This document shows positions 40,410 through 55,453 of a stretch of 64,000 nt of DNA, in pieces (the stretch's first letter is position 1; each line of letters starts with the position of its first letter). The stretch lies in the IMG/VR virus record IMGVR_UViG_3300038465_000091, positions 159,507 to 223,506 of that record, one strand, 5' to 3'. Under the pieces are notes generated by a model, which was not told the DNA's origin, did no database searches, and worked only from the letters and a program-made list of their open reading frames with translations. Made by a program: the position numbers and the translations under genes.

Positions 40410-41131
40410 AGATGCGTTTCCGTGTGCTTCCCTCTCGTGCAGCCACAACCTTTTGTGTGCCCGTTTCGCAGACTTGTACCTTCAGCGTTGAAGGTATTAC
40501 CACATCGACAACGACAGTGCCATGCCGCCTTTCCAGATTTTGTGTTGCTAACCCTGTCCATTACTGCGACACCGTTGATAATTACACCGAACATGTCTTT
40601 AGCGGGCTTAGGTTTAAGTTCTGGATGACTTCTAGATTGCTGGGCGATACACATATTGGCGATTGCTTCTGGGCCACGTTTGCGTCCAAGCCTAGCGTCT
40701 CTCAATTTTTTCCTACATTCTTCAGTATTAAGCGCAAATTTAATCTTAATAATGGTTTCAGGTGATACTTTACGCCCATGCTGTGCGACACTCATTTTAC
40801 GCCGACTCTCTTCAGTGTGAGGTCCAGTGAAACCTTCCCCACCTCGACAAATGTTGTAACCGTACTCGGGGTCTTGGGATTTGAGGAAGGCGATGAAGTC
40901 TCGTTCGTAAGCGTCAAGTTCTGGACGGGTCTGGATGTCCGACAGAAGAGCGTGGATGGTGAAGGCTTCAATGGGGCACTCTCTTAAAGCCTCGTACAGT
41001 CTAGACCGTTTCGATACTCCCTTTCTGGCGTGTCCAAATTTCTGCTGAAGATATTTCCTCAAGTTGTCACCCTTGTGCTGCCCCACGTAATATTTTCCTG
41101 TAGCATGGTTGACGATAAGGTAGATGTACAT
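40406..41131 (-). CDS. GIY-YIG homing endonuclease
   Basis: MYIYLIVN..TGKYYVGQ...GYNICRGG, NUMOD3 repeat, C-terminal W.CRCRCG...L..G.TKGCGC. Confidence 0.88.
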   Translation of the reverse strand: MYIYLIVNHATGKYYVGQHKGDNLRKYLQQKFGHARKGVSKRSRLYEALRECPIEAFTIHALLSDIQTRPELDAYERDFIAFLKSQDPEYGYNICRGGEGFTGPHTEESRRKMSVAQHGRKVSPETIIKIKFALNTEECRKKLRDARLGRKRGPEAIANMCIAQQSRSHPELKPKPAKDMFGVIINGVAVMDRVSNTKSGKAAWHCRCRCGNTFNAEGTSLRNGHTKGCGCTRGKHTETHL

Positions 41132-43695: not shown

Positions 43696-43814
43696 GGTAG
43701 TTGTCCTTGGAGGAAATATCCTCTACATAAGATGGATTCCGTAGCGAAAATATTTATTCGCGATTATTCCATCAATCATTTAATGACTTCAACAATCCCT
43801 AGTAGGGGACATCG

Positions 43815-44333
43815 ATGGCGTTGCTGAGGGGCTATTTATACGTGATCGCTGATAAAGGTCGGCAGTTTGCAAAAATAGGCATGTCACGGGATGTAATTTC
43901 CAGATTCAAGGGATTGCAGACCGCCTGTCCGCTTGATTTGGAGGTGGTGAGTGCCCATCCATGTACGTATGTCCGCTTTCGGGAATTCAAGGCTCATGAA
44001 CAGTTAAAGGATTTGCGCCTTAGAAATGAGTGGTTTAGTTGGGATGAGGTTAGGATAAATACGGCCATTGAGAAGGCTTTGGCGATTCCCGATGAGGTCA
44101 TAAAACCCAGTTTAGAAAAATTGTGGATGTCGAAACCAAACCCAGAACCAGAGGTTAAAGTTAGAGTCCATAGCTACCCTGTAAAACGGGTGGACACTGG
44201 GGAAGTATTTCCCACCGCTCAAGCGGCTGCCGAGGCGGTATTAGGTTCTAAGAGGCTCGCCAAGAAAATCAAGCAAGCGATCAGGGATGGGGCGAAATGC
44301 GGACCCACGTTCTGGGCAAGGGGAGATACATGA
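43815..44333 (+). CDS. GIY-YIG family protein (T5orf172/MUG113-like) with NUMOD1-like tail
   Basis: GYLYVI...AKIGMS...RFKGLQTACP..L...H..L..LRLRNEWF; DTGEVFPT...AAE. Confidence 0.8.
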   Translation: MALLRGYLYVIADKGRQFAKIGMSRDVISRFKGLQTACPLDLEVVSAHPCTYVRFREFKAHEQLKDLRLRNEWFSWDEVRINTAIEKALAIPDEVIKPSLEKLWMSKPNPEPEVKVRVHSYPVKRVDTGEVFPTAQAAAEAVLGSKRLAKKIKQAIRDGAKCGPTFWARGDT

Positions 44334-45040
44334 GCGTAGCACTTATCTTCATCTGCACGGGAGCCAACTATCACAAATACATCGAACCCGCAGTTGCCAG
44401 CGCGAAGAAGTATTTCCTGCCGCAGCAAACAGACATCCTGTTGTTTACGGATAGCGAGCGGCAGTACGACGTGGCGAAACAAGTCCAGTCGCCTCATCTC
44501 GGCTGGCCCAATGTCACGTGGCGCAGGTTTCATACGTTCTTGGGCGAGGAAGTTTGGCTGTCCGAGCATGACTTCCTTTGGTACATGGACGTTGACTCGG
44601 AGATCGTGGCCCCTGTGGGGGAGGAAATCTTTTCCGATGGCATCACCGCCACGGTACACACGTCGTTCATCCTGAGTAAAGGGACGTACTGCACTCCCGA
44701 GGAGAATCCGCGATCCGCCGCCTGCTTGAGCAAGAAAGACATCCGCAAGATGTACACGGGAATGTCCTACGGTGGAACATCTAAAGCTTTCCTCGCGTTG
44801 TGCCGCGAGTGCGCTACGATTGTGGACATCGACACCAAGAATAATTTTGTTCCCATTTGGCACGACGAAAGCGTGCTCAATAAATATCTGTACGACCACC
44901 AACCAGCCAAGGAGCTTGGAGAAGATTACAATGCTTGGAACAGGAAACCCAGCACCAAGGTGTTTCGCGTCCCCAAACCCGGTGCTCCGAATCGTCCTGC
45001 CGTCAACGGAGTTCAGCCGTCCGATCCGAGGAATGCATGA
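44330..45040 (+). CDS. GT6 family glycosyltransferase (ABO-like alpha-1,3-Gal/GalNAc transferase)
   Basis: ICTG.Y..Y......AKKYF...FTD...WP..T..RF...YMDVD...YGG...WHDESVLNKY. Confidence 0.85.
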   Translation: MSVALIFICTGANYHKYIEPAVASAKKYFLPQQTDILLFTDSERQYDVAKQVQSPHLGWPNVTWRRFHTFLGEEVWLSEHDFLWYMDVDSEIVAPVGEEIFSDGITATVHTSFILSKGTYCTPEENPRSAACLSKKDIRKMYTGMSYGGTSKAFLALCRECATIVDIDTKNNFVPIWHDESVLNKYLYDHQPAKELGEDYNAWNRKPSTKVFRVPKPGAPNRPAVNGVQPSDPRNA

Positions 45041-45744
45041 GGGTATTAGTAGCTATTCTCGCCTGCCACAGGTACGTCGCAATAAATGGTCGGGGTTGGG
45101 ATTGGACGAATAGGGATAAGCACCGCCTCATTCCCGTAGACGCGCAGATAGCCGCGTGTCGGGAGACTTGGGTCAAAGGTTTGGCGACGTACCCCAATGT
45201 CGATGTTAGATTCTTTTATGGACGCGGGGCGAACCGTCAGCCGCTAGCCGATGAGGTATTTTTGGATGTCGCGGACGATTACAAAAATCTACCATACAAA
45301 ACGAAAGGTATCTGTGGGTGGGCAAACGGGCATTACGATTTCACATTCAAAACGGACGACGACACCTTTGTTTGGACGAACAACCTCATGAATAGTGGGT
45401 TTGAAGGTTGCGATTACGTGGGCTCCGTCAACGACACCAGACCCCAAAGCCTCTATGCAACGGGGCTGGGGTATTGGTTGAGTGCAAGAGCAGTGAGATT
45501 GGTTGCTGGCGCAATCCCTAATACTGATTTAGAAGACCATTGGGTGGGGTCGGTGCTTCGTAAGTCGGGGATTGTTCCAAAACACGATAAGCGATACGTC
45601 AGTATAGGCAGCAAATTTGTGGGGGTAGATGCGATGCCTCGAAATTCCGAATTCATTGCCGTTCATCCGTGTAGTCCAGATATGATTCATACTTATGATT
45701 TCGAGGAATGTCCTCGGGGTCGTCCTTGGAGCCAAAATGATTAA
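45037..45744 (+). CDS. GT31-like galactosyltransferase
   Basis: RETW...LDVADDYKNLPYKT...FKTDDDTFV...DYVG...GLGYWLS...EDHWVG. Confidence 0.85.
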   Translation: MRVLVAILACHRYVAINGRGWDWTNRDKHRLIPVDAQIAACRETWVKGLATYPNVDVRFFYGRGANRQPLADEVFLDVADDYKNLPYKTKGICGWANGHYDFTFKTDDDTFVWTNNLMNSGFEGCDYVGSVNDTRPQSLYATGLGYWLSARAVRLVAGAIPNTDLEDHWVGSVLRKSGIVPKHDKRYVSIGSKFVGVDAMPRNSEFIAVHPCSPDMIHTYDFEECPRGRPWSQND

Positions 45745-46531
45745 CGTCACGCTAGATGGTGGGTTGGGTAATCAGCTTTTTCAATATGCCCTCGGTCGCA
45801 GATTCGCGGCCAATGGGCATGATGTTACGTTTGACAGAACACGTGTGGTCGATTATGATGGTGCCGCCCACCATAAAACTCGCGCTCAGTATGGTCTAGA
45901 CGGGTTTAATACTACAGTAAAGTTCGGTAGCCCCATAGGTCCGATCTTCAGCGACTACAATTTCCCGGGGGCTTTACCATTTCGACCTGAAGTCTTGAAT
46001 TTGCCCGCTCCCCACACCTTGAGGGGGCATTGGCAGAGTGAGCAATATTTTGCGAATGTGGGTGAGCTTCGTAAGGAATTGACACTCAAGGTCCAACCCA
46101 GTAGTGCCGTTCAAAGTGTCGCGGAACGAATTAAAGCTGGTAACAGCGTGTTCCTGCACGTTCGTCATGGTGATTATCTGATAAAGGAAAACGTGACGTA
46201 CCATGGTCTGATGACCCCCGAATACTACACTCGTGCATTGGGGTTCATCTCAGCCCGTGTAACTGATATCAAGCCCTTCATATTCTCGGACGACCCGGAG
46301 TGGTGCCGACAGAATTTGGCAGGGGAAGTTATAGCTGGGAATAATCAGTTTGAAGACCTGTGGTTGATGAGTTTGTGTCAACACGCCGTCATCGCCAACA
46401 GCACATTTAGCTGGTGGGGTGCGTGGCTAGGTGATACACAAGAGCGCATAGTGGTAGGACCCGCCCAATGGTTTTTGACACCCCATTTAGACGCACGTGA
46501 CATCATCCCGACACGTTGGGTAAAACTATGA
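45737..46531 (+). CDS. GT11 alpha-1,2-fucosyltransferase
   Basis: GGLGNQLFQYA, GHWQSEQYF, HVRHGDY, FSDD, DLWLMSLC.H.VIANSTFSWWGAWL. Confidence 0.92.
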   Translation: MINVTLDGGLGNQLFQYALGRRFAANGHDVTFDRTRVVDYDGAAHHKTRAQYGLDGFNTTVKFGSPIGPIFSDYNFPGALPFRPEVLNLPAPHTLRGHWQSEQYFANVGELRKELTLKVQPSSAVQSVAERIKAGNSVFLHVRHGDYLIKENVTYHGLMTPEYYTRALGFISARVTDIKPFIFSDDPEWCRQNLAGEVIAGNNQFEDLWLMSLCQHAVIANSTFSWWGAWLGDTQERIVVGPAQWFLTPHLDARDIIPTRWVKL

Positions 46532-47439
46532 TGACCGATCTTGTTATAGGGATTGCATCCGGCTATACATGGCATGAGCTTTATCCTTTCGTGGTCAGCC
46601 TACGGCGCTGCGGCTATGAAGGTCGTGCGGTACTCATTATTGGCGACGGACCACATGACGCGGGGCATCCCATTATCTATGAACGTGGTGAGGTGAAAGC
46701 CGACTTGTCCTCCAAGCTGGAGGATCACGGAATCGAGACCATCAACCTCGGAAACTTCCCCGAACATCCGATTCTTGCGAGGTTCCCCACGATTGCCGAC
46801 GCAATAGACAAGTCGAGCGGCTTGCGCTATGCGCTAAGTATGGACACGAAGGACATTGTGTTCCAATACGATCCCACGAAATGGTTGGAACGACATCTCG
46901 GCGACAAACAGATCGCGGTGCAGTCCGAGGAGACGACCTATGCTAAGAGTGAGGGAAACAAAAGAAACTGCATCCTCGCCTTCGGCGAGGAGACGTTCGA
47001 ACGAATGCGAGATGAGGATGTGCTGAATGCGGGGGTCATCTGCGGCACGCCGTCGTGGGTAAGCCGCCTGCACCGCGACATCTACAATCTCACGTTGACC
47101 GACATGCGGATGAAACGTGGCGAGAAAATAGGCTACGAACAGATGATCGCCGACCAGACGGCGCTGAACATTCTGCTTCGGCAGCCGCCCTATTCCGATG
47201 TAACCAAGATAGTTCACAACCACGAGGGTTTTGTTTACGAAGGTTGTCTCTACGGCAGTATTGCCCCCCACACATTGATGACCTCCGAACAAGTCGTCGA
47301 GCTTGCCAGTAGGACGAACTTGAGATGGGACGACGACATGACGATGACCACGAACGATGGCAGCCCGTATGCCGTTGTTCACCAGTATTTCGCCGTGTCT
47401 GAATGGATTCACGGCTTGCGGGGCAAGTTCGAGGGGTGA
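46528..47439 (+). CDS. GT-A fold glycosyltransferase-like protein
   Basis: PFVVSLR..GY.G...MDTKDIVFQYDP...LNAGVICG...DQTALN...VVHQY. Confidence 0.7.
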   Translation: MMTDLVIGIASGYTWHELYPFVVSLRRCGYEGRAVLIIGDGPHDAGHPIIYERGEVKADLSSKLEDHGIETINLGNFPEHPILARFPTIADAIDKSSGLRYALSMDTKDIVFQYDPTKWLERHLGDKQIAVQSEETTYAKSEGNKRNCILAFGEETFERMRDEDVLNAGVICGTPSWVSRLHRDIYNLTLTDMRMKRGEKIGYEQMIADQTALNILLRQPPYSDVTKIVHNHEGFVYEGCLYGSIAPHTLMTSEQVVELASRTNLRWDDDMTMTTNDGSPYAVVHQYFAVSEWIHGLRGKFEG

Positions 47440-47477
47440 GCAAACAAAGAACTTAAGGAACGGTACAGGGTAGAATA

Positions 47478-48737
47478 ATGGATTTGAATAACCCAGAAAT
47501 CAAACGCTGGACAGACAGTGGTACTGCATGTTGGGGCGTAACCGACGAATACAAGGGCGAACTGATCCTTGATTATGCGCGGCGTTTCAACCTGATGACT
47601 TTCGTCGAAACTGGAACATGGCACGGCGGCACCGTGGAGTATGTCAAGCAGCATTTCGACCAGATTCACTCCATAGAACTGTCCCCGGAGCTTGTCGAGA
47701 ATTGCAGAAAAAGATTTTCTGGTTCGCCCAACATCCACTTATATCAGGGTGACAGTGGTGAAAAGATCAAGGAGCTTTTTGGTGGTCTGAAAACTCCGAC
47801 GCTATTCTGGTTGGACGCACACCCGTCAGGCGGTGACACTGTTGGAACCTACAGTCCCTTGGAGAAGGAGCTTACGGCTATTTTTGAGAGCGGCGTCAAA
47901 GGCGTTATCCTGATTGACGACCTACAGGATTGCTGGGAACACAATTGGGCAGAAGTGGCGATGCGGACAGTCGCCAAATACAGCGGTTGGCGGCATGAAA
48001 TAACCCACGGCATCATGAGGATCGTATCCGTAGACGCCAGTGTCATCATCCCCCTGTACAACCTGCAAGACTTCGTGGGGCAAACCATCGAGTCCGCGCT
48101 CAATCAGACTCACCGATTTTTTGAAGTTATCGTCGTCAACGATGGGTCCACAGACGGGAGTCTCAATGTAGCGAAACGCTATGGAGATCGTATCATATTG
48201 ATAGATCAGCAGAACGCTGGATTGAATGCATCGCGTAACGCCGGAGCCAGAGTGTCAACGGGGACTTTCCTACTGCCGTTGGACGCCGACGACTGGATCG
48301 AGCCAACGTACCTTGAAAAGACTATCCCTTTAATGACTGAGGGCATTGGTGTAGTGTCTACCGATATGGACATATTTGGCGAGGTCAGTCGGGCGGACAT
48401 ATCTGGCGAGGTCAATCGGTTGCAGCCTATTGGTAGACCTACTCTCGAAATTCAAAAATGGGCGAACACGATGCCGTGCTGCTCCCTAATACGGCGCACA
48501 GCGTTTAACCAAGCTGGCGGCTATAGCGCCCGCCCAGACATTCAGGCTTACGGAGATTGGAATCTTTGGATTGACATTCTCAAACGCGGTTGGAAAGTCG
48601 CCTCACTAGCGGAACCCTTGTTTCACTATCGTGTGCGCCCGATATCAATGAGTTTAGAAGTATCATCAAAGCACGCTGAACTGGCGAAGGCTATTCGCCG
48701 TAATCACCCCGACCTGTTTAGGCTGGAGGAAAGATGA
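47478..48737 (+). CDS. SAM-methyltransferase-like and GT2 glycosyltransferase fusion
   Basis: FVETGTWHG...SIELS...GDS...FWLDAH...ILIDD, then SVIIPLYN...VVNDGSTD...LDADD. Confidence 0.85.
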   Translation: MDLNNPEIKRWTDSGTACWGVTDEYKGELILDYARRFNLMTFVETGTWHGGTVEYVKQHFDQIHSIELSPELVENCRKRFSGSPNIHLYQGDSGEKIKELFGGLKTPTLFWLDAHPSGGDTVGTYSPLEKELTAIFESGVKGVILIDDLQDCWEHNWAEVAMRTVAKYSGWRHEITHGIMRIVSVDASVIIPLYNLQDFVGQTIESALNQTHRFFEVIVVNDGSTDGSLNVAKRYGDRIILIDQQNAGLNASRNAGARVSTGTFLLPLDADDWIEPTYLEKTIPLMTEGIGVVSTDMDIFGEVSRADISGEVNRLQPIGRPTLEIQKWANTMPCCSLIRRTAFNQAGGYSARPDIQAYGDWNLWIDILKRGWKVASLAEPLFHYRVRPISMSLEVSSKHAELAKAIRRNHPDLFRLEER

Positions 48738-49732
48738 CCAAAATTCTCGTTACTGGCGGTGCTGGCTTTATCGCCAGCCATTTTATTGACCATGTTCTAC
48801 GTACCACGGACTGGCACATTACGGTGCTTGACAAGTTCACCTACGCCTCGAATGGTCTGACTCGGCTAAAAGAGATCGGTGCGTATGATAATCCACGGGT
48901 TAAAATCCACGTCCACGATTGTGCACGACCTTTCGGCTCCTGTTTGGAAAACGAGATCGGTCATATCGACTATCTATTGCACATGGCGGCAGGCACCCAC
49001 GTGGACAATTCCATAGCATGTCCGAGAGATTTCGTCGAAGCGAACATTTTCGGCACCTTCGAGATGCTGGAATACGCTCGCCGCATACCGGGGCTCAAGA
49101 AATTCGTCTACTTCTCCTCGGATGAAGTCTACGGCCCGGCAGCCGTTGGTCAGAAGTTTGAAGAGTGGGACAGATACAACTCTTGCAACCCGTATTCCGC
49201 TACCAAGGCTGGCGGCGAGGAGCTTTCTCTCGCATGGGCTAACACTTACGGGGTGCCCGTAGTCATCACCCACACTATGAATGTGATTGGTGAAAGACAG
49301 CACCCCGAAAAATTCGTGCCGAGGGTTGTTCGTAGCGTGCTTGCGGGCACTGAGATTCAGATACACACAGACCCCAAGACAGGTAAGCCCGGGAGCCGCC
49401 ACTACCTGCATTGCCGAGATGTTTCGGACGCCGTGATGTTCCTGTTGCCTCGCGCTGAAATTCGCCAGAAGTACAACATAGCAGGCGAAGTGGAGATTTC
49501 CAATCTTGAAGTCGCACAAGCGGTAGCCGAAGTTTTGGGTAAAGAACTCAAGTTCAAGCAAGTTAACCCAATCGACGTGAGACCGGGGTTTGATGTGCGC
49601 TATGGGCTTAGTGGCAAGAAGATGGCCGAGATGGGTTGGACGCCCGCTCACAGTTTTCGGGAGAACATCAAGTACCTCGTGGAGTGGATGGTCGCTCCCG
49701 AGAATTCTCACTGGCTGAAAGTCGGGGATTAA
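48734..49732 (+). CDS. rfbB: dTDP-glucose 4,6-dehydratase-like SDR enzyme
   Basis: VTGGAGFIASHF, LDKFTYA, HMAAGTHVDNSI, SSDEVYG, PYSATKA, QHPEKFVP. Confidence 0.8.
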   Translation: MTKILVTGGAGFIASHFIDHVLRTTDWHITVLDKFTYASNGLTRLKEIGAYDNPRVKIHVHDCARPFGSCLENEIGHIDYLLHMAAGTHVDNSIACPRDFVEANIFGTFEMLEYARRIPGLKKFVYFSSDEVYGPAAVGQKFEEWDRYNSCNPYSATKAGGEELSLAWANTYGVPVVITHTMNVIGERQHPEKFVPRVVRSVLAGTEIQIHTDPKTGKPGSRHYLHCRDVSDAVMFLLPRAEIRQKYNIAGEVEISNLEVAQAVAEVLGKELKFKQVNPIDVRPGFDVRYGLSGKKMAEMGWTPAHSFRENIKYLVEWMVAPENSHWLKVGD

Positions 49733-49733
49733 C

Positions 49734-50339
49734 ATGAACGAACTCTGCACACTCGGAGCGAAATACAGGACGGATAAACATAACGCCAAAAACTTCCCTG
49801 AAGAAGGCGATCTGACATCCGTCTACCACGGTCTTCTGAAGGACCGTAGGGATGATGTTCGGAAGGTTCTGGAGATCGGGATTGGGCACACCGTGGCGGG
49901 GCGAGAAGGTTGGATGGGAACTATAGACGATTACCACGCCGGGGCTAGCCTGTTCATGTGGGAAGAATATTTCTCCAATGCGGAGATTTTTGCGTTGGAT
50001 ATTGTCACTGAGGCGCTCATCAATCAAGGTCGCATCCGCTCTTTTTGGTGCGACCAGAGCAGTGAAGATTCCCTGCGAAGTATTATGCCCACGCTCGGAA
50101 CTGATTTCGATCTCATTATAGACGACGGTTCTCACCAAGTTGAGCATCAGATTTTGACAGCTAACACCTTCATGCCCCTACTGGGTCCGAGGGGAATCTA
50201 CGTCATCGAAGACATCCACCTGAAAGATAGGGAGATGATAAAGAACGGAATCAAGAATCCGTCCGAGTTTAGGGAAGTTATAGACACGGAAGGTCTCATC
50301 GGCGACCTAATGCTGATCTTTAAGAAGGAGAGTGTATGA
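49734..50339 (+). CDS. Sugar O-methyltransferase-like (class I SAM, MycE/TylE-like)
   Basis: TDK...VLEIGIG...ASL.MWEEYF.NAEIFALDI...CDQS...FDLIIDDGSH...YVIEDI. Confidence 0.8.
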   Translation: MNELCTLGAKYRTDKHNAKNFPEEGDLTSVYHGLLKDRRDDVRKVLEIGIGHTVAGREGWMGTIDDYHAGASLFMWEEYFSNAEIFALDIVTEALINQGRIRSFWCDQSSEDSLRSIMPTLGTDFDLIIDDGSHQVEHQILTANTFMPLLGPRGIYVIEDIHLKDREMIKNGIKNPSEFREVIDTEGLIGDLMLIFKKESV

Positions 50340-51316
50340 GCAACATAATGGTAACAGGCGCAGGCGGTTTCATCGGGCATCATCTGGTCAAGCGGCTGAA
50401 GGCAGAGGGACACTTCGTTCGCGGTATCGACATCAAGTACCCCGAGTTTGAAAAGACGGCGGCGGACGAGTTCTGGCTTAAGGATTTGCGTTGGGACTAT
50501 AACGCCATCCACGCTTTCAACGGTGAGCCATTCTGTGTTCGCGAGTTCGACGAGGTTTATCAGCTTGCGGCTGACATGGGCGGCATCGGGTACATCACGA
50601 AGTATCTCGCCGACATCGCTCGTAACAACATTCTGATTAACGTCAACATGTTGGAGGCGGCTCGGAGATTTGGCGTCAAGCACTACCTCTACACGTCCTC
50701 GGCCTGCGTGTACAATCAAGACAAGCAGCGAGATGCCAACGTAGTGCCCCTGAGGGAAGAGGATGCTTACCCCGCGCTACCCGAACGCGGCTACGGCTGG
50801 GAGAAATTGTTCGCTGAGCAAATGTGCGAATACTACCAGCACGATTACAACCTCGACATTCGCATGGTGAGATTCCATAACGTCTATGGTCCTCTCGGGA
50901 CATACGACGGCGGTAAAGAGAAGTCCCCCGCAGCCATCTGCCGCAAGGTTGCACTGGCACGGGATGGCGGGGAGATCGAAGTTTGGGGCGATGGGTTGGC
51001 GACCCGTAGCTACATGTACATTGATGACTGTGTGGAGGGACTGAGACGCCTTATGAACTCGGGTTATCAGAAGCCATTAAACCTCGGCACTGATGAGCTT
51101 GTCACGGTAGATGGTCTGGTGGACATTATCAGTGGTGTTGCTGGAAAGACCTTGACCAAGCGCCATGACCTCACCAAGCCGCAGGGTGTGCGCGGACGAA
51201 ACAGCGACAATAATCTGCTTCGCCAGATTCTCGGATGGGAACCGAAGACACTCCTCGCGGATGGATTACGGCCAACATACGAATGGATTAAGGATCAAGT
51301 ATGTCCGAAACTCTAA
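50336..51316 (+). CDS. GDP-mannose 3,5-epimerase-like SDR enzyme
   Basis: GAGGFIG, LAADMGGIGYI, SSACVY, YGWEKL, RFHNVYGP.GT..GGKEKSPAA.CRK, PQGVRGRNSDN are hallmark GME motifs. Confidence 0.85.
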   Translation: MSNIMVTGAGGFIGHHLVKRLKAEGHFVRGIDIKYPEFEKTAADEFWLKDLRWDYNAIHAFNGEPFCVREFDEVYQLAADMGGIGYITKYLADIARNNILINVNMLEAARRFGVKHYLYTSSACVYNQDKQRDANVVPLREEDAYPALPERGYGWEKLFAEQMCEYYQHDYNLDIRMVRFHNVYGPLGTYDGGKEKSPAAICRKVALARDGGEIEVWGDGLATRSYMYIDDCVEGLRRLMNSGYQKPLNLGTDELVTVDGLVDIISGVAGKTLTKRHDLTKPQGVRGRNSDNNLLRQILGWEPKTLLADGLRPTYEWIKDQVCPKL

Positions 51317-53028
51317 TAGCGATAATTACTTGCAAGAAGTACGCCTATCGAGTCCAGATGCAGTTGGACACGTGGGTTCCGCAAGCAATTGCCGCAGGAT
51401 TTGACGTTGAGGTTTTTGACGGCGAGAGGCTAGGTGTCCCCGACGACTACTTGTCCCTGCCGCTTAAGACTAAAGCCCTGTGCAAGTGGGCTGCTGACCG
51501 TGGGTACAAGCGTCTACTAAAGCTTGATGACGACGCCTACATTCGAGTTGCAAATTTTCATACTGTTTTTGATGACTATGCGGGAATTTTCATCTTGAAA
51601 AATGACTGTGGGCTGCGGAACAAGGACATTAAAGATTTCCCAAATGGTACGTGTCCCTTCCCATACGCCAGTGGCGGCGGATACTGGTTGTCCGAACGTT
51701 CCATGAAAATTTTGATAGACGCGCCTTTTTATAGTGATTGGGCCGAAGACAGATGGGTGGGTCAGACGTTGGGGCGGGCAGGAATTTTCGTGACCGTACT
51801 TCCAAACTACTACATGTTCATTCCTTGGGCAAACGCGGCTCACCCACTGGATTATAAAAATACGAAGGAATACACTCATATCCCCATACAGCAAGTGATT
51901 GCCTCGGAAGATTTGATTCTACTCACACAAATCACCAAAGCCGAGGAGTTCAAAGCCCTCCATGCGTGGCAACCTAAAGAACAAGTTGCGGCTGGCTCTC
52001 CCCCAACCCTAAATTCTACGGCATTGATCGTCATAGCCACGGGAGTTGTGTATCAGCACTATGCAAAAGAGCTTATCGCTTCAGCGAAACAGTTCTTTGT
52101 TCCCCATGATGTGTTTCTGTTTACGGATAGTCAAGAGCCTTTTGATGGTGTGAGTGTTCAACTTCACCACGCCCATCTCGGTTATCCTGGATCGACCCTG
52201 ATGAGATACCACGCTATCGTATCGCAGCGTGAAGCTCTCTCCAATTACGACTACATATTCTACGTGGACGCTGACATGAAGTTTCTTTCTACGGTCTCGG
52301 CGGGTGAGGTGTTTTCTGCTGGTATCACCGCGACCGAACACCCCGGATTTATCGGTGGTGGGGGATCGCCTGAGACTAGACCAAAATCTGCGGCTTACGT
52401 TCGAGAACTCAAAGTGTATTATTGTGGCGGATTTAACGGCGGTACTGCTAAGGCATTTTTAGCTATGGCTGAGGAGCTAAAGCGGGGAGTGGATACCGAC
52501 AAAGCCAACGGCATAACAGCGGTCTGGCATGACGAATCTCATCTCAATCGTTTTTTGTTTTATAATCCCCCATCGCGGGTTCTCTCCGTGGAATTTTGTT
52601 GGCCCTCTGTGGAATGGCGATTAACTTCGTACCTTAAAGAATGGCGAAAAGTACGAGGTGAAACGTATGGGCAGGAGCTTGTTCCTAAGTTGATGGCTAT
52701 CGACAAATCGTCAAGGACGGAATACTCAAGTATAAGTCCTCAACCCCCACCCCCGACCCCGCCACCTAATGTGATCGCGGCACGGTGTAACCGTCACAAT
52801 GTGTCGGCTTGCAGTGTATGTATAGCGCACGGTTGGCAATTTCGACAGCCTATCACCCCTGCGCCCACACCGATATCGCCACAAGCCACAACCCCGCCCG
52901 CTCCCCCTCCTCAACCGAATCCGCAAGTGCAGGCGGCAGCGGCGAAGGCTCTTACGGCAACTTTGAAACCAAGTCAAGGGGCTTTGTATCGTAACAGGAA
53001 TGCGGACAATCAGAGGAAGTTGAGATAA
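51301..53028 (+). CDS. GT31-like and GT6 bifunctional glycosyltransferase with Pro-rich tail
   Basis: N-terminus DDYLSLPLKT...KLDDD...GGGYWLS...EDRWVG; C-terminus IATG..Y...FTD...YVDAD...YYCGGFNGG...WHDESHLNRF. Confidence 0.85.
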   Translation: MSETLIAIITCKKYAYRVQMQLDTWVPQAIAAGFDVEVFDGERLGVPDDYLSLPLKTKALCKWAADRGYKRLLKLDDDAYIRVANFHTVFDDYAGIFILKNDCGLRNKDIKDFPNGTCPFPYASGGGYWLSERSMKILIDAPFYSDWAEDRWVGQTLGRAGIFVTVLPNYYMFIPWANAAHPLDYKNTKEYTHIPIQQVIASEDLILLTQITKAEEFKALHAWQPKEQVAAGSPPTLNSTALIVIATGVVYQHYAKELIASAKQFFVPHDVFLFTDSQEPFDGVSVQLHHAHLGYPGSTLMRYHAIVSQREALSNYDYIFYVDADMKFLSTVSAGEVFSAGITATEHPGFIGGGGSPETRPKSAAYVRELKVYYCGGFNGGTAKAFLAMAEELKRGVDTDKANGITAVWHDESHLNRFLFYNPPSRVLSVEFCWPSVEWRLTSYLKEWRKVRGETYGQELVPKLMAIDKSSRTEYSSISPQPPPPTPPPNVIAARCNRHNVSACSVCIAHGWQFRQPITPAPTPISPQATTPPAPPPQPNPQVQAAAAKALTATLKPSQGALYRNRNADNQRKLR

Positions 53029-53029
53029 A

Positions 53030-53150
53030 GGGCTGCGACTTAATGCCCGCCAGCCGCAGCCCATGCAAGGTTCCAAAACTGTCATGACAGTTCCAGAGAG
53101 CGGCCATGCCCGCAAACCCAGCAAGAGCCGGGTTATATGGACGGCGGGAA
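53030..53150 (-). ncRNA. Putative structured RNA between convergent genes
   Basis: Minus-strand stems close with G-U pairs (53134-53127/53122-53115; 53062-53052/53040-53030); palindrome at 53077-53092. Confidence 0.4.
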
Positions 53151-53154
53151 TTAC

Positions 53155-53457
53155 TTAAGATTTTGGTAGCTGGGAATTTTCTAGCTTGGCGATGCGATCC
53201 TCAAGCTCGTGGAACTTCATGCGTCCAAGGTTGAGAGACGACGACATGCCCCGTTGTGCGGACAGCAAGTCGGCTATGTGCTCGGTCACTGGACGGGATG
53301 CTACAATCGCTTCCCATGCACGGTCACGGTTAGCCCATGCCGCGTCAATGGAGTCGCCATCGCCGGGGTTCGCGTTGAACAGGACACGCAGGCAGCGTTC
53401 ACCAGCCTCGTCTAACAGCGCCATCGCTTGCTCGTAAGTTAACTTCGCCTCACTCAT
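53155..53457 (-). CDS. Hypothetical protein (100 aa)
   Basis: ORF downstream of and co-oriented with 53493..54398. Confidence 0.6.
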   Translation of the reverse strand: MSEAKLTYEQAMALLDEAGERCLRVLFNANPGDGDSIDAAWANRDRAWEAIVASRPVTEHIADLLSAQRGMSSSLNLGRMKFHELEDRIAKLENSQLPKS

Positions 53458-53492
53458 GGTTCTTTAATTTAATTACAATAAAGTTTCCCGAC

Positions 53493-54398
53493 TCAGCCAT
53501 TTTGACCGAATAAATAAACTTGAAGATTCGTAGTGCCGTCTCCACCTTTGACGCACACACGAACGTAGTTGAAGTATAGGCAGGATGGCGACCACATGAC
53601 CGATGTGGGAGAACCAGTGTACGACGCCCCACCCCCAAACAGTCCCGTGACCGTATCGTATGAAATCGCAGCCTCATTGTCCGTACCAGTCACAGCCGCC
53701 ACATTGAGATTGCCAGTAATGTTTGTCCCCCAACTTGGGGTGCCCGTCGTGTTGGCCGCTGGCGGCACGATCAGGTTGTTCTGCCATGCGTACAGCATGA
53801 ATGCCTGATTGACGCTGATCGGGCCTGTGGCGACGGCAAGGTTGCCGAATGTCTGACCTGAGTTAAATGGAGGATTCTGAAGGACATAGGGTCCGCTGTT
53901 GACGCTGACGTACACATTATAGGCTGTGGCGTATCCACCCGCGTCAGGACCGGGGGCCGCGACCGAAATAGTTTTACCTGCGGCGACAGCAAGCGTTGTC
54001 GCTGCGCTGGCTCCCGTTTCGCCCTGAAGATTGACGTAGGTCAGCTTCACCCCGTAAGTAGCTGCTGGATAGGTGAAAGCCTGATCGCCCCCGCCAGCGT
54101 TGGGAGACTGCCCGTGTCCCGCGCTCGTGGGGGTAAATGCGGTGAGAACTGGGGCCGAAGGAGCGGCAATCTGAGTGGCGGCGGTGAGGTTATCGGTTAA
54201 GACATTGGGGTCGTTTGAAACTTCAATCCAAATAGACGCTCCCGATGGAAGAGTTGCTGGTACGCCAGTCGAAGCGTTGCGAGCGGCAACCTGTATCGAT
54301 GAAGCCACAAAGTTCGAGACGTTCCGCCACGGGCTGTTGATTTGGGTCGTACCCGAGGGACAGATAATATTGAGGAGCGTATTGTTGATAGTCTGCAT
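53493..54398 (-). CDS. Putative virion structural protein with an Ig/FN3-like insert
   Basis: AAGGAG RBS; AAPSAPVL...YGVKLTYVN..GET..S...YNVYV inserted between IEVSND and YVRV. Confidence 0.7.
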   Translation of the reverse strand: MQTINNTLLNIICPSGTTQINSPWRNVSNFVASSIQVAARNASTGVPATLPSGASIWIEVSNDPNVLTDNLTAATQIAAPSAPVLTAFTPTSAGHGQSPNAGGGDQAFTYPAATYGVKLTYVNLQGETGASAATTLAVAAGKTISVAAPGPDAGGYATAYNVYVSVNSGPYVLQNPPFNSGQTFGNLAVATGPISVNQAFMLYAWQNNLIVPPAANTTGTPSWGTNITGNLNVAAVTGTDNEAAISYDTVTGLFGGGASYTGSPTSVMWSPSCLYFNYVRVCVKGGDGTTNLQVYLFGQNG

Positions 54399-54513
54399 GA
54401 GAACTCCTTGCTAATTAAAGCACCCGAAAGTCGATAACTCTGGTTAATACCCATCAGAAAGCCGTTTGTTTCCCGAAAATCAACTATCGGATGCTACTTC
54501 AGAGGGTAACAAC

Positions 54514-54831
54514 ATGGGCAAGCTTCGTGCGGCGACAACTTTCGGATTAGGGGCTCAAAAATCCGCTGATTCCAGCGTTTTCACGGTTAATCACTTCATT
54601 TCCAGCACCCCCGTACCCCCCGCCCTCAAGCAAAAGATCGCCAGCATGGGACTTGAACGGATAGCTGGCAATATATATGAATCACCGAGCACTCGGGATT
54701 TTTGGAAAGTAAAAGGAAACAGTATCATAAAGCTAGTTGGCGATGAGGTAGACAATGGAGAGTCAATCGCCGCCGCCCCTAAAAACGACCCTATGGGTTT
54801 TATGGGTGCTTTTGACGATATCGAGTTCTAA
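54514..54831 (+). CDS. Conserved-looking hypothetical protein
   Basis: QKSAD, QKIAS.GL.RIA.N.Y.SPST.DFWKV; upstream late-type motif. Confidence 0.7.
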   Translation: MGKLRAATTFGLGAQKSADSSVFTVNHFISSTPVPPALKQKIASMGLERIAGNIYESPSTRDFWKVKGNSIIKLVGDEVDNGESIAAAPKNDPMGFMGAFDDIEF

Positions 54832-54832
54832 C

Positions 54833-55453
54833 ATGCTGATTTACAAGCTCACAAATCGAATCAACGGTGGGGTCTACATCGGCAAATATGTCGGAGATGA
54901 GGCAGACGCTCGTTTTCAACAGCACGTTCGCGAAGCGAGACGGGGTGGGGATCGTTACCTATGCCGCACTATTCGCAAGTACGGCTCGGATGCCTTCAAG
55001 GTCGAAGTGATTTATCGTGCCAAGACCGCTGATGAACTCTCCAAGATGGAGACCTTTTTCATCGTTCTCCATCAAAGTCATAAAGTTGAGAACGGCTACA
55101 ACATGACGCTGGGCGGTGAGGGAACTGTGGGCCGGATTATTTCGGAAAGAACAAGACAGCTTTGGAGTGAGCAGCGTAAAGGAAGACCTGTCACAGCGCA
55201 ACAGTTGAAAAACCTAGCTCTTGGGCATCATCGACCGAAAAAAATAGTTGCGGTTAAACCCGCCGAAGAAGTGGAAGCCGCAATGAAAGCAGCGATGCGG
55301 GCTGCATGGACTCCCGAACGTAGGGCAGCACAAGCACAGCGGATAGCAAATCGGAATCGTCTTCGTGTTGGAAAACGTGGAGCATTATCTACGGAATGGA
55401 AGATGGCGATTTCAAATGCAAAGAAGGGGAAAGCAGCTTCGGCTGCGGCATAA
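54833..55453 (+). CDS. GIY-YIG homing endonuclease
   Basis: LIYKLTNRINGGVYIGK...METFFIVLHQS.KVENGYNMTLGG. Confidence 0.88.
   Translation: MLIYKLTNRINGGVYIGKYVGDEADARFQQHVREARRGGDRYLCRTIRKYGSDAFKVEVIYRAKTADELSKMETFFIVLHQSHKVENGYNMTLGGEGTVGRIISERTRQLWSEQRKGRPVTAQQLKNLALGHHRPKKIVAVKPAEEVEAAMKAAMRAAWTPERRAAQAQRIANRNRLRVGKRGALSTEWKMAISNAKKGKAASAAA

What the first reader, a model, noticed from the sequence alone, without database searches (positions are those of the whole stretch)
50336..51316. GDP-mannose 3,5-epimerase instead of Gmd/Fcl: GT11 may transfer L-galactose
Seen: a GME-type enzyme but no gmd or fcl in the cluster. Established: GME makes GDP-L-galactose (and L-gulose); L-Gal is 6-hydroxy-L-fucose and is accepted by several fucosyltransferases. 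Inference: an L-Gal analogue of the H/A/B antigen that might resist fucosidases.
Basis: partly seen in the sequence, partly recalled or inferred. Interest (0 to 1): 0.6.

Follow-up and report, generated by a model that had tools for sequence, protein, structure and literature searches.

The report
Phage L-galactose donor gene beside fucosyltransferase-type enzyme
A giant phage from peat soils carries a true GDP-mannose 3,5-epimerase inside a tightly packed sugar-transferase operon with no fucose-pathway genes, so its "fucosyltransferase" probably caps a glycan with L-galactose, although this is not proven; sister phages carry a fucose-type pathway at exactly the same spot.

Summary
ORF 50336-51316 (+, 326 aa) is a GDP-mannose 3,5-epimerase (GM35E/GME). 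It scores 318 bits against the plant enzymes, with the next enzyme class at 107, and every GM35E-defining residue is conserved. No Gmd, Fcl or sugar nucleotidyltransferase was found in the cluster or in the 223-kb record.

The record is a tailed jumbo phage (about 71% complete). The island recurs nearly unchanged in peat, permafrost and soil metagenomes.

The gene lies in a ten-gene co-directional operon: GT6, GT31-like, GT11, a phage-specific GT-A-like protein, MT/GT2, an RmlB-like 4,6-dehydratase, a sugar O-methyltransferase, GME and a GT31/GT6 fusion.

The interpretation (GT11 transfers L-Gal) is partly supported:
- All six GME-bearing relatives also carry GT11 and GT6 and lack Gmd/Fcl.
- Two sister phages keep the same flanks but replace the 7.1-kb GT11-to-GME cassette with a GT11 plus Gmd-based one.
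- GME-GT11-GT6 is a translationally coupled cassette in the complete cyanophages S-PRM1 and S-CAM9, which have no Gmd or Fcl.
- Published assays show that two GT11 enzymes accept GDP-L-Gal.

Against it: GT11 lineages do not sort by donor module, bacterial GME genes are not linked to GT11, the host is unknown and could supply GDP-fucose, and other transferases sit closer to GME. Fucosidase resistance is untested speculation.

The parts
50336..51316 (+). GDP-mannose 3,5-epimerase (GM35E/GME), 326 aa. This is the finding itself.
   Evidence: PDB 8sg0/2c59, E about 1e-93, 318 bits. Invariant S122, C124, Y153, K157, N182, K196, R224 and R288 correspond to AtGME S143, C145, Y174, K178, N203, K217, R243 and R306 (PMC8787198). 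92% identical in sister phage G157.
45695..46531 (+). GT11 (alpha-1,2-fucosyltransferase family), the candidate L-galactosyltransferase. The real start is probably the ATG at 45737.
   Evidence: PF01531 2.4e-23, 83 bits. HVRHGDY and NSTFSWWGAWL motifs. No solved relative. Nearest relative is the GT11 of sister phage G155, 50% identity.
44297..45040 (+). GT6 (blood-group A/B transferase family) with a DVD metal-binding motif.
   Evidence: PF03414 3e-22 and NF041524 131 bits. Best PDB match is BoGT6a 4ayj/4cj8, 7e-33. YMDVDSE aligns where BoGT6a has NAN. 94% identical in G154.
45037..45744 (+). GT31-like (Galactosyl_T) transferase, the presumed maker of the beta-Gal acceptor.
   Evidence: PF01762 4e-10. 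75% and 74% identical in G154 and G155.
46528..47439 (+). Phage-specific protein of unknown family, probably a GT-A-like sugar transferase.
   Evidence: No Pfam or NCBIfam hit. Atlas look-alikes are Uroviricota-only clusters, one with 10% Nucleotid_trans and some fused to GT29/GT7 domains. Homologues in L014 (47%) and L005 (35%).
47478..48737 (+). Two-domain protein: a weak class-I methyltransferase-like N-domain plus a GT2 domain.
   Evidence: PF00535 2e-32 at residues 188-344. N-terminal 185 aa give weak Methyltransf_25/11/24 hits.
48734..49732 (+). RmlB-type NDP-hexose 4,6-dehydratase (not a Gmd).
   Evidence: TIGR01181 257 bits (cut-off 365); gmd model 39 bits. PDB 2hun 1e-55. SDEVYG and YSATK motifs. 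About 50% identical to cyanophage genes.
49734..50339 (+). Small SAM-dependent sugar O-methyltransferase (TylE/MycE-like).
   Evidence: PDB 8ia9 1.5e-15 and 3ssm 9e-14. Weak Methyltransf_24 hit. 92% identical in G157. One run carries a 1-nt insertion after 50025.
51301..53028 (+). GT31-like plus GT6 fusion with a proline-rich C-terminal tail. Its start overlaps the GME stop by 16 nt.
   Evidence: PF01762 at residues 47-162 and PF03414 at 300-446. Sequence. A GT31-like gene also follows GME directly in L005 and L016.
45685..52778 (+). Exchangeable cassette. This segment has no DNA similarity to sister phage G154, which is otherwise collinear at 77-85% nt on both sides and carries GT11, SDR, RmlC, a PLP enzyme, Gmd, a GT10-like gene and a GT31/GT6 fusion here.
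   Evidence: blastn of window against L272/L267/L273/L261. Gene content.
43815..44333 (+). MUG113/T5orf172 (GIY-YIG-related) endonuclease-like gene at the island's 5' edge.
   Evidence: PF13455 9e-13 and PF10544 3e-7.

Best explanation
The gene is an auxiliary GDP-mannose 3,5-epimerase of a tailed jumbo phage from peat and permafrost soils. The host is unknown; the closest cellular homologues are in Acidobacteriota. The phage has no nucleotidyltransferase of its own, so the enzyme should draw on the host's GDP-D-mannose and convert it to GDP-beta-L-galactose, with some GDP-L-gulose.

The gene is part of a translationally coupled ten-gene operon of soluble transferases. The most likely flow is:
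1. A GT31-like enzyme lays down a beta-linked galactose.
2. The inverting GT11 enzyme caps it alpha-1,2 with whichever L-galacto-configured GDP-sugar is on hand, here L-Gal.
3. A GT6 enzyme adds an alpha-1,3 hexose.
4. Methyltransferases, GT2 and a 6-deoxyhexose branch (from the RmlB-like enzyme) decorate the product further.

GT11 and the donor-making genes sit together in a roughly 7-kb cassette. Sister phages have exchanged it for one with GT11 and a Gmd-based GDP-deoxy-L-hexose pathway, so the family appears to vary the capping L-sugar by swapping modules.

What is shown: enzyme family and catalytic residues, gene order, absence of Gmd/Fcl, cassette exchange, and recurrence in other phages. 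What is inferred: the GDP-L-Gal product, GT11 as its user, the order of transfers, and the acceptor (host envelope glycan or virion protein).
For: **GME identity**
- 318 bits to solved plant GM35E against 107 bits for the next class.
- All residues that the GM35E review lists as defining are invariant in 19 phage and bacterial homologues (PMC8787198). These include the Lys base and Arg acidifier that separate GM35E from Fcl/GMER.

**Phage identity and dependence on the host**
- Portal, DNA polymerase, baseplate wedge and endolysin PHROG hits.
- No ManC/RmlA-type gene.
- No Gmd or Fcl.

**Operon structure**
- Ten co-directional genes from 43815 to 53028, with overlaps of 4-50 nt or gaps of at most 38 nt.

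**Link between GME and GT11**
- All six GME-bearing family islands (window, L014, L004/L019, L016, L017, L005+L260) carry GT11 and GT6 and no Gmd/Fcl. In L016 the GT11 overlaps the GME start.
- All eight family islands with GT11 carry a phage GDP-L-sugar module: six GME and two Gmd-type. A more distant complete 463-kb relative (59% in the giant protein), G156, has neither GT11 nor GME.
- Against G154 the cassette boundaries fall at 45684 and 52779, enclosing both GT11 and GME.
- Outside the family, 33 of 80 viral GT11 loci have GME within 10 kb. Eleven non-redundant GT11s lie within 150 nt of GME. Four lie within 150 nt of Fcl, the known donor synthase, which serves as a positive control for reading adjacency this way.
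- L030 has GME-GT11a and Fcl-GT11b side by side.
- The complete cultured cyanophages S-PRM1 (gp092-gp093-gp094) and S-CAM9 carry GME-GT11-GT6 with 4-nt overlaps and no Gmd/Fcl in the genome.

**Biochemistry**
- Several other fucosyltransferases accept GDP-L-Gal (PMC8787198).
Against: - No assay exists, and donor preference cannot be read from sequence. GT11 has no solved relative.
- The host is unknown and may supply GDP-L-fucose. In the class holding the closest cellular GME, 80 of 151 genomes have Gmd, and 8 of the 9 GT11-bearing genomes do.
- Inside the phage family, GT11 lineages are interleaved between GME-type and Gmd-type islands. The window's GT11 is sister to that of Gmd-type G155 (97/84), so there is no L-Gal-specific GT11 clade.
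- Between the window and G157 the GME block is 79-87% identical in DNA, but GT11 is only 42% identical in protein.
- In 80 bacterial GME loci GT11 is essentially absent (2 weak hits), and 53 of 80 viral GME loci have no GT11 within reach. GME products therefore clearly feed other transferases elsewhere.
- In the window the gene abutting GME is the GT31/GT6 fusion, not GT11, which lies 3.8 kb upstream.
- The record is only about 71% complete.
Confidence: 0.5

Rival explanations
1. GME is a real GDP-mannose 3,5-epimerase, but its product goes to a different transferase of the island. Candidates are the GT31-like domain encoded immediately downstream, the phage-specific GT-A-like protein at 46528-47439, or GT2. 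Alternatively the product used is L-gulose or an O-methylated form. GT11 then does its usual job with host-made GDP-L-fucose.
For: - A GT31-like gene directly follows GME in the window, L005 and L016, and lies 1.2 kb away in L017.
- GT11 lineages do not track the donor module.
- Gmd is common in the candidate host class, and 8 of 9 GT11-bearing genomes there have it.
- Most viral (53 of 80) and nearly all bacterial (78 of 80) GME loci lack a nearby GT11, so other GT families must use GDP-L-Gal/L-Gul.
Against: - GT31 and GT2 enzymes are known as UDP-sugar users (established family knowledge), whereas GT11 is a GDP-L-sugar user that demonstrably takes GDP-L-Gal (PMC11987014).
- Every family island with GT11 carries its own GDP-L-sugar module, which would be unnecessary if host GDP-Fuc sufficed.
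- GME and GT11 overlap, or are separated by no more than about 15 nt, in several unrelated phage lineages.
Confidence: 0.3
2. The GME-like enzyme does not act on GDP-mannose. Instead it works with the RmlB-like dehydratase two genes upstream as a 3,5-epimerase (or epimerase/reductase) on an NDP-4-keto-6-deoxyhexose, producing a 6-deoxy-L-hexose that the neighbouring methyltransferase then O-methylates. A variant of this idea is that it substitutes for Fcl on host Gmd product.
For: - The RmlB-like, MT and GME genes are contiguous, and the trio is conserved at 92-93% protein identity in G157.
- Some cyanophage loci carry GME plus Gmd without Fcl next to GT11 (L048, L061, L078, L089).
- GME and Fcl share the Cys acid and the epimerisation chemistry on a 4-keto intermediate (PMC8787198).
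Against: - The protein has the GM35E-specific Lys base and Arg acidifier, not the His/Lys pair of Fcl, and scores 318 bits to GM35E against about 95 to Fcl.
- A net reduction would need exchangeable NAD(P)H, whereas GM35E keeps NAD+ tightly bound (PMC8787198).
- In four of the six GME-bearing family islands, GME occurs without the RmlB-like gene.
- S-PRM1 and S-CAM9 have GME but no Gmd.
Confidence: 0.08
3. The GME gene is a passenger of a mosaic, endonuclease-flanked island with no specific partner. Its association with GT11 only reflects the clustering of all sugar genes in phage hypervariable islands.
For: - GIY-YIG/T5orf172-type genes lie around the island.
- The island is strongly mosaic.
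- The label clustering on the GT11 tree can arise from shared ancestry alone.
Against: - The gene is intact, and its catalytic residues are invariant across phages that are 44-92% identical.
- The sequence is identical in several independent metagenomes.
- GT11 is directly adjacent, often with a 4-nt overlap, in at least three separate GT11 lineages and in both gene orders.
- GT11 is 17 times more frequent near viral than near bacterial GME (27 of 80 versus 2 of 80, Fisher p = 1.6e-7).
Confidence: 0.07

Closest known systems
GDP-mannose 3,5-epimerase (GM35E/GME): Arabidopsis enzyme (PDB 2C59 and related) and the bacterial MfGM35E of Methylacidiphilum fumariolicum
   Same: Full-length similarity (318 bits). 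Extended SDR with GAGGFIG. Ser/Tyr/Lys triad, Cys-Lys acid/base pair, acidifying Arg, diphosphate Arg and orange-wall Asn are all conserved (PMC8787198, PMC6678494).
   Different: It is encoded by a phage. It lacks the roughly 30-residue N-terminal and roughly 35-residue C-terminal extensions of the plant enzyme (326 versus 377 aa). It sits in a transferase operon, not an ascorbate pathway. Its activity is untested.
Cyanophage GME genes (annotated as GME in S-SCSM1, PMC9602691; generically as 'nucleotide-sugar epimerase' in S-PRM1 gp092, S-CAM9 and others)
   Same: Phage auxiliary GME, 44-53% identical. Often found with GT11 and GT6.
   Different: Different phage lineage (T4-like marine cyanophages versus a soil jumbo phage). 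There the cassette is compact (GME-GT11-GT6). S-SCSM1 also carries Gmd and Fcl. No paper found in my searches links the phage GME to the GT11 donor.
E. coli O86 blood-group-B-like O-antigen pathway (WbnH, WbnJ, WbnK as the GT11 alpha-1,2-FucT, WbnI as the GT6; PMC4506291) and Bacteroides ovatus BoGT6a
   Same: The combination of a beta-Gal transferase, a GT11 alpha-1,2 L-sugar transferase and a GT6 alpha-1,3 transferase. The window's GT6 is closest to BoGT6a, which needs a 2'-fucosylated Gal acceptor (PMC3961637).
   Different: The donor module is GME, not Gmd/Fcl/ManC/ManB. No Wzx, Wzy or initiating transferase, and no polytopic membrane protein in the 223 kb held. The GT6 keeps DXD whereas BoGT6a has NXN. 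The island is phage-borne.
E. coli O55 WbgN (GT11 alpha-1,2-colitosyltransferase) with the Gmd-based GDP-colitose pathway
   Same: A GT11 enzyme served by a non-fucose GDP-L-sugar module. WbgN also accepts GDP-L-Gal in vitro (PMC11987014). The sister phages' Gmd-SDR-RmlC-PLP module resembles such a deoxy-L-hexose pathway.
   Different: In the window the module is GME, a single-enzyme route from GDP-mannose. No natural GT11 that uses L-Gal as its physiological donor has been described, as far as my searches show.

Membership tests
GDP-mannose 3,5-epimerase (GM35E, EC 5.1.3.18) | Extended SDR fold with an N-terminal glycine-rich NAD-binding motif | tested here: met
   GAGGFIG at residues 8-14. 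Pfam Epimerase 1.7e-44.
GDP-mannose 3,5-epimerase (GM35E, EC 5.1.3.18) | Catalytic triad Ser143 / Tyr174 / Lys178 (At numbering) for C4 oxidation and reduction | tested here: met
   S122, Y153 and K157 align to these residues and are invariant in 19 homologues (PMC8787198).
GDP-mannose 3,5-epimerase (GM35E, EC 5.1.3.18) | Cys145-Lys217 acid/base pair (Lys, not the His of Fcl/GMER) | tested here: met
   C124 in SSAC and K196 in GGKEK; both invariant.
GDP-mannose 3,5-epimerase (GM35E, EC 5.1.3.18) | Arg306 acidifying the Cys (Lys in GMER); Arg243 on the diphosphate; Asn203 | tested here: met
   R288 (GVRGRNSDN), R224 and N182 are invariant.
GDP-mannose 3,5-epimerase (GM35E, EC 5.1.3.18) | Closer to characterised GM35E than to any other NDP-sugar SDR | tested here: met
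   318 bits to GM35E; 107 to UXS, 105 to GalE, 95 to Fcl. NCBIfam Fcl model 129 bits against a cut-off of 500.
GDP-mannose 3,5-epimerase (GM35E, EC 5.1.3.18) | [quoted passage not shown] | not testable with these tools
   Needs an enzyme assay.
GDP-L-fucose pathway (Gmd + Fcl) | A Gmd (TIGR01472) and an Fcl (NF047922) over the curated cut-offs | tested here: not met
   Best scores in the 223-kb record are 36.6 bits (cut-off 415) and 124 bits (cut-off 500), the latter on the GME ORF itself.
GT11 alpha-1,2-L-fucosyltransferase family (for ORF 45695-46531) | Pfam Glyco_transf_11 over the gathering score, plus the conserved HxRRGDY-type and SxFSWWxAxL-type motifs | tested here: met
   83.3 bits against a cut-off of 23.9. 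HVRHGDY (second Arg replaced by His) and NSTFSWWGAWL.
GT11 alpha-1,2-L-fucosyltransferase family (for ORF 45695-46531) | Donor is GDP-beta-L-fucose | not testable with these tools
   No solved relative for pocket analysis. [quoted passage not shown]
Wzx/Wzy-type O-antigen cluster making a blood-group-like unit (E. coli O86 type) | GT11 plus GT6 plus a beta-Gal transferase in one cluster | tested here: met
   GT6 at 44297, GT31-like at 45037, GT11 at 45695, GT31/GT6 fusion at 51301.
Wzx/Wzy-type O-antigen cluster making a blood-group-like unit (E. coli O86 type) | Own flippase, polymerase or initiating phosphoglycosyltransferase (polytopic membrane proteins) | tested here: not met
   A hydropathy scan of all 206 ORFs of the record found no protein with more than 4 hydrophobic segments, and none in the island. 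This is a crude test on an incomplete genome.

The most novel reading that the evidence does not exclude
Phage glycan islands may work as plug-and-play cassettes. A donor-tolerant GT11 caps the same GT31-made acceptor with whichever GDP-L-sugar the co-resident module produces, and GT6 then completes an A/B-like trisaccharide. Via GME the sugar is L-galactose. Via the sister phages' Gmd-SDR-RmlC-PLP module it is a 6-deoxy, or possibly 3,6-dideoxy or amino, L-hexose. Natural L-galactose versions of the H/A/B-type epitope would then be made by phages in both peat soils and the ocean, through the GME-GT11-GT6 cassette of S-PRM1, S-CAM9 and many uncultured contigs. Module exchange would act as serotype switching of the infected cell's surface or of the virion.
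Probability: 0.35. Interest if true: 0.7.

Novelty: new variant of a known kind. Interest (0 to 1): 0.55.

Why it matters
GME itself is a known enzyme, and phage copies have been annotated before. No GT11 whose physiological donor is GDP-L-galactose has been described, and nobody seems to have pointed out that phages repeatedly couple GME to GT11 and GT6 without any fucose pathway.

If the reading is right, three things follow:
- It adds a natural L-galactosyl counterpart of the H/A/B-type glycan.
- It shows how phages diversify a capping sugar by swapping a donor-making cassette under conserved transferases.
- It supplies ready-made enzyme pairs (GME plus an L-Gal-using GT11 and a matching GT6) for making L-galactosides, which the GM35E literature explicitly asks for (PMC8787198).

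It is directly testable in cultured cyanophages that carry the compact cassette. If the reading is wrong, the locus is still a clean example of a phage auxiliary GDP-L-sugar gene in a mosaic glycan island.

Tried and rejected
- **Large window proteins.** PHROG and Pfam scans of the nine largest proteins gave almost nothing beyond Ice_binding-like and tail-fibre hits. Phage identity had to come from the rest of the record.
- **Promoters and terminators.** The scan of 43000-55000 found no more sites than shuffled sequence, so the operon is inferred from gene packing only.
- **GT11 donor pocket.** No PDB relative exists at E <= 1, so I attempted no structural argument on the C6 position.
- **L-Gal-specific GT11 clade.** Across all viral GT11s the Gmd/Fcl and GME contexts fall in separate clades, but these follow phage lineages. 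Inside the window's own family the idea fails, so I rejected it as evidence.
- **GME-GT11 linkage in bacteria.** Not found: 2 weak HMM hits in 80 loci. At genome level in the Terriglobales-containing class, GME is only weakly enriched among GT11 genomes (4 of 9 versus 23 of 142, p = 0.055), while Gmd is present in 8 of 9.
- **RmlB-like plus GME as one 6-deoxy-L-hexose pathway.** Considered and ranked low; see the second rival.
- **Host assignment.** Only the weak hint that the closest cellular GME homologues (64-68% identity among the top matches) are from Acidobacteriota MAGs, together with the peat/permafrost habitat. I could not run a CRISPR or tRNA-based test.
- **Expression.** No RNA run holds the stretch, so nothing can be said.
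- **Searches not used.** I did not run the exhaustive protein search, structure prediction or complex prediction, because the family assignment did not need them.
Full report
**1. What is at the coordinates**

Pfam sees only the generic NAD-dependent epimerase/dehydratase fold. The best NCBIfam model is Fcl at 129 bits, far below its cut-off of 500.

A search of all solved structures is decisive. Plant GDP-mannose 3,5-epimerases match at E = 5e-94 to 1e-92 (314-318 bits) over residues 4-322. The next enzyme classes reach about 107 bits (UDP-GlcA decarboxylase), 105 (GalE) and 95 (Fcl).

The GM35E review (PMC8787198) lists the residues that define the enzyme and separate it from GalE and from Fcl/GMER:
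- Ser143/Tyr174/Lys178, the catalytic triad.
- Cys145-Lys217, the acid/base pair (His replaces Lys in GMER).
- Arg306, which acidifies the Cys (Lys in GMER).
- Arg243 and Asn203.

All align to identical residues here (S122, Y153, K157, C124, K196, R288, R224, N182). All are invariant in an alignment of 19 phage and bacterial homologues that are 45-85% identical to the window protein. The gene is therefore a GM35E by every test sequence allows. Only the assay is missing.

**2. The surroundings**

The window is the last 64 kb of a 223,506-bp IMG/VR virus record that CheckV rates about 71% complete. The record encodes a portal protein, a DNA polymerase, helicases, ribonucleotide reductase, an endolysin and a baseplate wedge protein. 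Gene packing is dense and prokaryote-like. It is a tailed jumbo phage.

GME is the ninth of ten co-directional genes from 43815 to 53028, with overlaps of 4-50 nt or gaps of at most 38 nt:

| Coordinates | Product |
|---|---|
| 43815-44333 | T5orf172/MUG113 endonuclease-like gene |
| 44297-45040 | GT6; closest to Bacteroides ovatus BoGT6a but with a DVD motif |
| 45037-45744 | GT31-like Galactosyl_T protein |
| 45695-46531 | GT11, with HVRHGDY and FSWWGAWL motifs |
| 46528-47439 | Phage-specific, probably GT-A-like protein |
| 47478-48737 | Methyltransferase-like domain plus GT2 |
| 48734-49732 | RmlB-type NDP-hexose 4,6-dehydratase (SDEVYG, YSATK) |
| 49734-50339 | TylE/MycE-like sugar O-methyltransferase |
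| 50336-51316 | GME |
| 51301-53028 | GT31-like/GT6 fusion with a proline-rich tail |

The whole record lacks Gmd, Fcl and any ManC/RmlA-type nucleotidyltransferase. It also lacks any polytopic membrane protein that could be a flippase, polymerase or initiating transferase. The phage must therefore use host GDP-mannose and NDP-glucose. Its transferases are soluble.

The island is real. It is present almost word for word in peat, permafrost and soil metagenomes of at least six studies. One independent contig spans 45601-51500, and three further runs tile it with identical contigs.

**3. How common is the gene?**

GME homologues are abundant:
- More than 8,000 proteins in the word search.
- At least 592 stretches that encode a relative in the species-representative prokaryote genome set. 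The best matches are Acidobacteriota at 64-68% identity.
- At least 584 viral contigs.
- Many cultured T4-like cyanophages at 47-50% identity. One of them, S-SCSM1, has been published with the GME annotation (PMC9602691).

A phage GME as such is therefore not new.

**4.

*(a) Within the phage family.* Relatives found through GME all carry GT11 and GT6 in the same co-directional island and have no Gmd/Fcl. This holds although the rest of the island differs: some have UDP-glucose dehydrogenase, others heptose genes or other methyltransferases. In L016 the GT11 overlaps the GME start.

*(b) Sister phages.* Relatives found through the 1895-aa protein downstream include two sister phages, G154 and G155. 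They are collinear with the window at 77-85% nt on both sides of the island. They share GT6 (94% and 53% aa identity) and GT31 (75% and 74%). Between window positions 45685 and 52778 they carry a different cassette:
- GT11 (41% and 49% identity).
- A true Gmd (519 bits).
- An SDR.
- An RmlC-type 3,5-epimerase.
- A DegT/RfbH-like PLP enzyme.
- A methyltransferase or a GT10-like gene.
- A GT31/GT6 fusion (G154).

They have no GME. GT11 and the GDP-L-sugar module thus lie together in an exchangeable cassette. All eight family islands with GT11 have a phage-encoded GDP-L-sugar module. A more distant complete 463-kb relative has neither GT11 nor GME.

*(c) Outside the family.* Of the 80 viral loci most similar in GT11, 33 have GME within 10 kb. 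Eleven non-redundant GT11 genes lie within 150 nt of GME. Four lie within 150 nt of Fcl, which serves as an internal positive control for reading adjacency as donor supply. Some contigs carry both pairs side by side: L030 has GME-GT11a and Fcl-GT11b, and L070/L090 are similar.

The compact GME-GT11-GT6 cassette, with 4-nt overlaps, is present in the complete genomes of the cultured cyanophages S-PRM1 (gp092-gp094) and S-CAM9. Neither has Gmd or Fcl anywhere.

[quoted passage not shown] The authors conclude that substrate availability dictates the product (PMC11987014). Fucosyltransferases of other families also take GDP-L-Gal (PMC8787198).

**5. What speaks against it**

- In 80 bacterial GME loci, GT11 is practically absent: two weak HMM hits, against 27 of 80 viral GME loci (Fisher p = 1.6e-7). 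Even among viral GME loci, two thirds have no GT11 nearby. GDP-L-Gal/L-Gul clearly feeds other transferases in many systems.
- In the class that holds the closest cellular GME, Gmd is found in 80 of 151 genomes and in 8 of the 9 that have GT11. GME is only weakly enriched among the GT11 genomes (4 of 9; p = 0.055). A host could well supply GDP-fucose.
- On a careful tree the family's GT11s do not sort by module. The window's GT11 is sister to that of Gmd-type G155 (97/84). The GT11 of Gmd-type G154 is sister to those of GME-type L014 and L260 (100/99).
- The GME block is shared with G157 at 79-87% nt while GT11 is only 42% identical in protein. This fits a donor-tolerant GT11. It fits equally well a GT11 that ignores the phage module.
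- The gene that abuts GME in the window, in L005 and in L016 is GT31-like, not GT11.

**6. Verdict on mechanism**

I rate the GM35E assignment at about 0.9. I rate the proposition that GT11 is the physiological user of phage-made GDP-L-Gal at about 0.5. I rate the full GT31, then GT11, then GT6 'L-Gal analogue of an A/B-type trisaccharide' at about 0.3-0.35.

The acceptor is open: a host lipid-linked or envelope glycan, or virion proteins. The lack of membrane components and the position between tail-fibre-like genes and a giant structural-looking protein keep virion glycosylation in play.

The RmlB-like dehydratase and the O-methyltransferase most likely serve a separate 6-deoxyhexose and methylation branch. 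GME occurs without the dehydratase in four of the six GME-bearing islands.

Fucosidase resistance and vertebrate antigen mimicry are not supported by anything here. The habitat is peat and permafrost soil.

**7. Novelty**

Three things are known already: GME, phage copies of it, and the in-vitro tolerance of GT11 for L-Gal. My searches found no paper describing the following:
- The recurrent GME-GT11-GT6 coupling in phages that lack a fucose pathway.
- The exchange of a GME-type cassette for a Gmd-type one under conserved GT6/GT31 flanks.

I therefore file the finding as a new variant of a known kind, with moderate interest. It is readily testable in S-PRM1 or S-CAM9.

- Read laying was given 5,901 bases.
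- No alternative genetic code was used.

Noticed in passing
window 15674-19102 (+), 39009-40409 (-), 41182-43695 (-): Three large proteins carry Ice_binding-like domains (PF11999; up to 4e-61, two copies in the 837-aa protein). One also hits tail-fibre PHROGs. These are probably beta-solenoid fibre or receptor-binding proteins. An ice-binding-like fold in a peat/permafrost phage is curious.
   Followed up: no
window 40406-41131 (-), 43815-44333 (+), 54755-55453 (+): GIY-YIG/NUMOD3 and T5orf172/MUG113 endonuclease-like ORFs bracket the glycan island. This fits its mosaic, exchangeable nature.
   Followed up: partly
window 44297-45040 (+): The GT6 keeps a DXD motif (YMDVDSE) where the Bacteroides-type bacterial GT6 enzymes have NXN. 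A 2014 paper knew of only two bacterial GT6 enzymes with DXD (PMC3961637). The prediction is a metal-dependent enzyme.
   Followed up: partly
window 50025 (inside the methyltransferase gene 49734-50339): The 13.2-kb contig of soil run X2 has one extra A after 50025, which would frameshift the O-methyltransferase in that population. At depth 11 it could also be an assembly error. The other three runs match the window.
   Followed up: no
L272 (G154:C1:60000-79999) and L273 (G155:C1:98000-117999): Sister phages carry Gmd, an SDR, an RmlC-type epimerase and a DegT/RfbH-like PLP enzyme (plus a GT10-like gene in G154) after the same GT6-GT31-GT11 start. This looks like a GDP-linked 6-deoxy, 3,6-dideoxy or amino L-hexose pathway whose product I could not name.
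   Followed up: partly
P0011 island: L005 and L260 (ENA k141_415010, 82,963 bp); also on an 894,233-bp JGI contig (sample 3300035696): An 83%-identical GME sits in an island that also has GHMP kinase, SIS/HAD, transaldolase (a heptose pathway), UDP-Glc dehydrogenase and GFO genes, followed by a 1794-aa protein like the window's 1895-aa one. The same island is reported on an 894-kb contig. That could be a very large phage, a prophage in a chromosome or a misassembly; its DNA could not be fetched.
   Followed up: no
window 46528-47439 (+): This 303-aa protein has no Pfam family. It belongs to clusters seen almost only in Uroviricota, some members being fused to GT29 or GT7 domains, with a faint Nucleotid_trans link. 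It is probably an undescribed phage glycosyltransferase family.
   Followed up: partly
window 51301-53028 (+), C-terminal ~110 residues: The GT31/GT6 fusion ends in a proline/threonine/alanine-rich low-complexity tail (PPPPTPPPN..., PAPPPQPNPQ). This is unusual for a cytoplasmic transferase. It may be a linker or tether.
   Followed up: no
window 50525-51115: Contig depth rises several-fold here in all four metagenomes, with many partly matching contigs. The conserved core of GME genes of other organisms maps onto it, showing how common GME is in peat communities.
   Followed up: no
G156 (IMGVR_UViG_3300033405_000001, 463,033 bp; locus L266): A relative rated 100% complete at 463 kb shares the giant protein (59% identity) but has neither GT11 nor GME. 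The family seems to span very different genome sizes.
   Followed up: no
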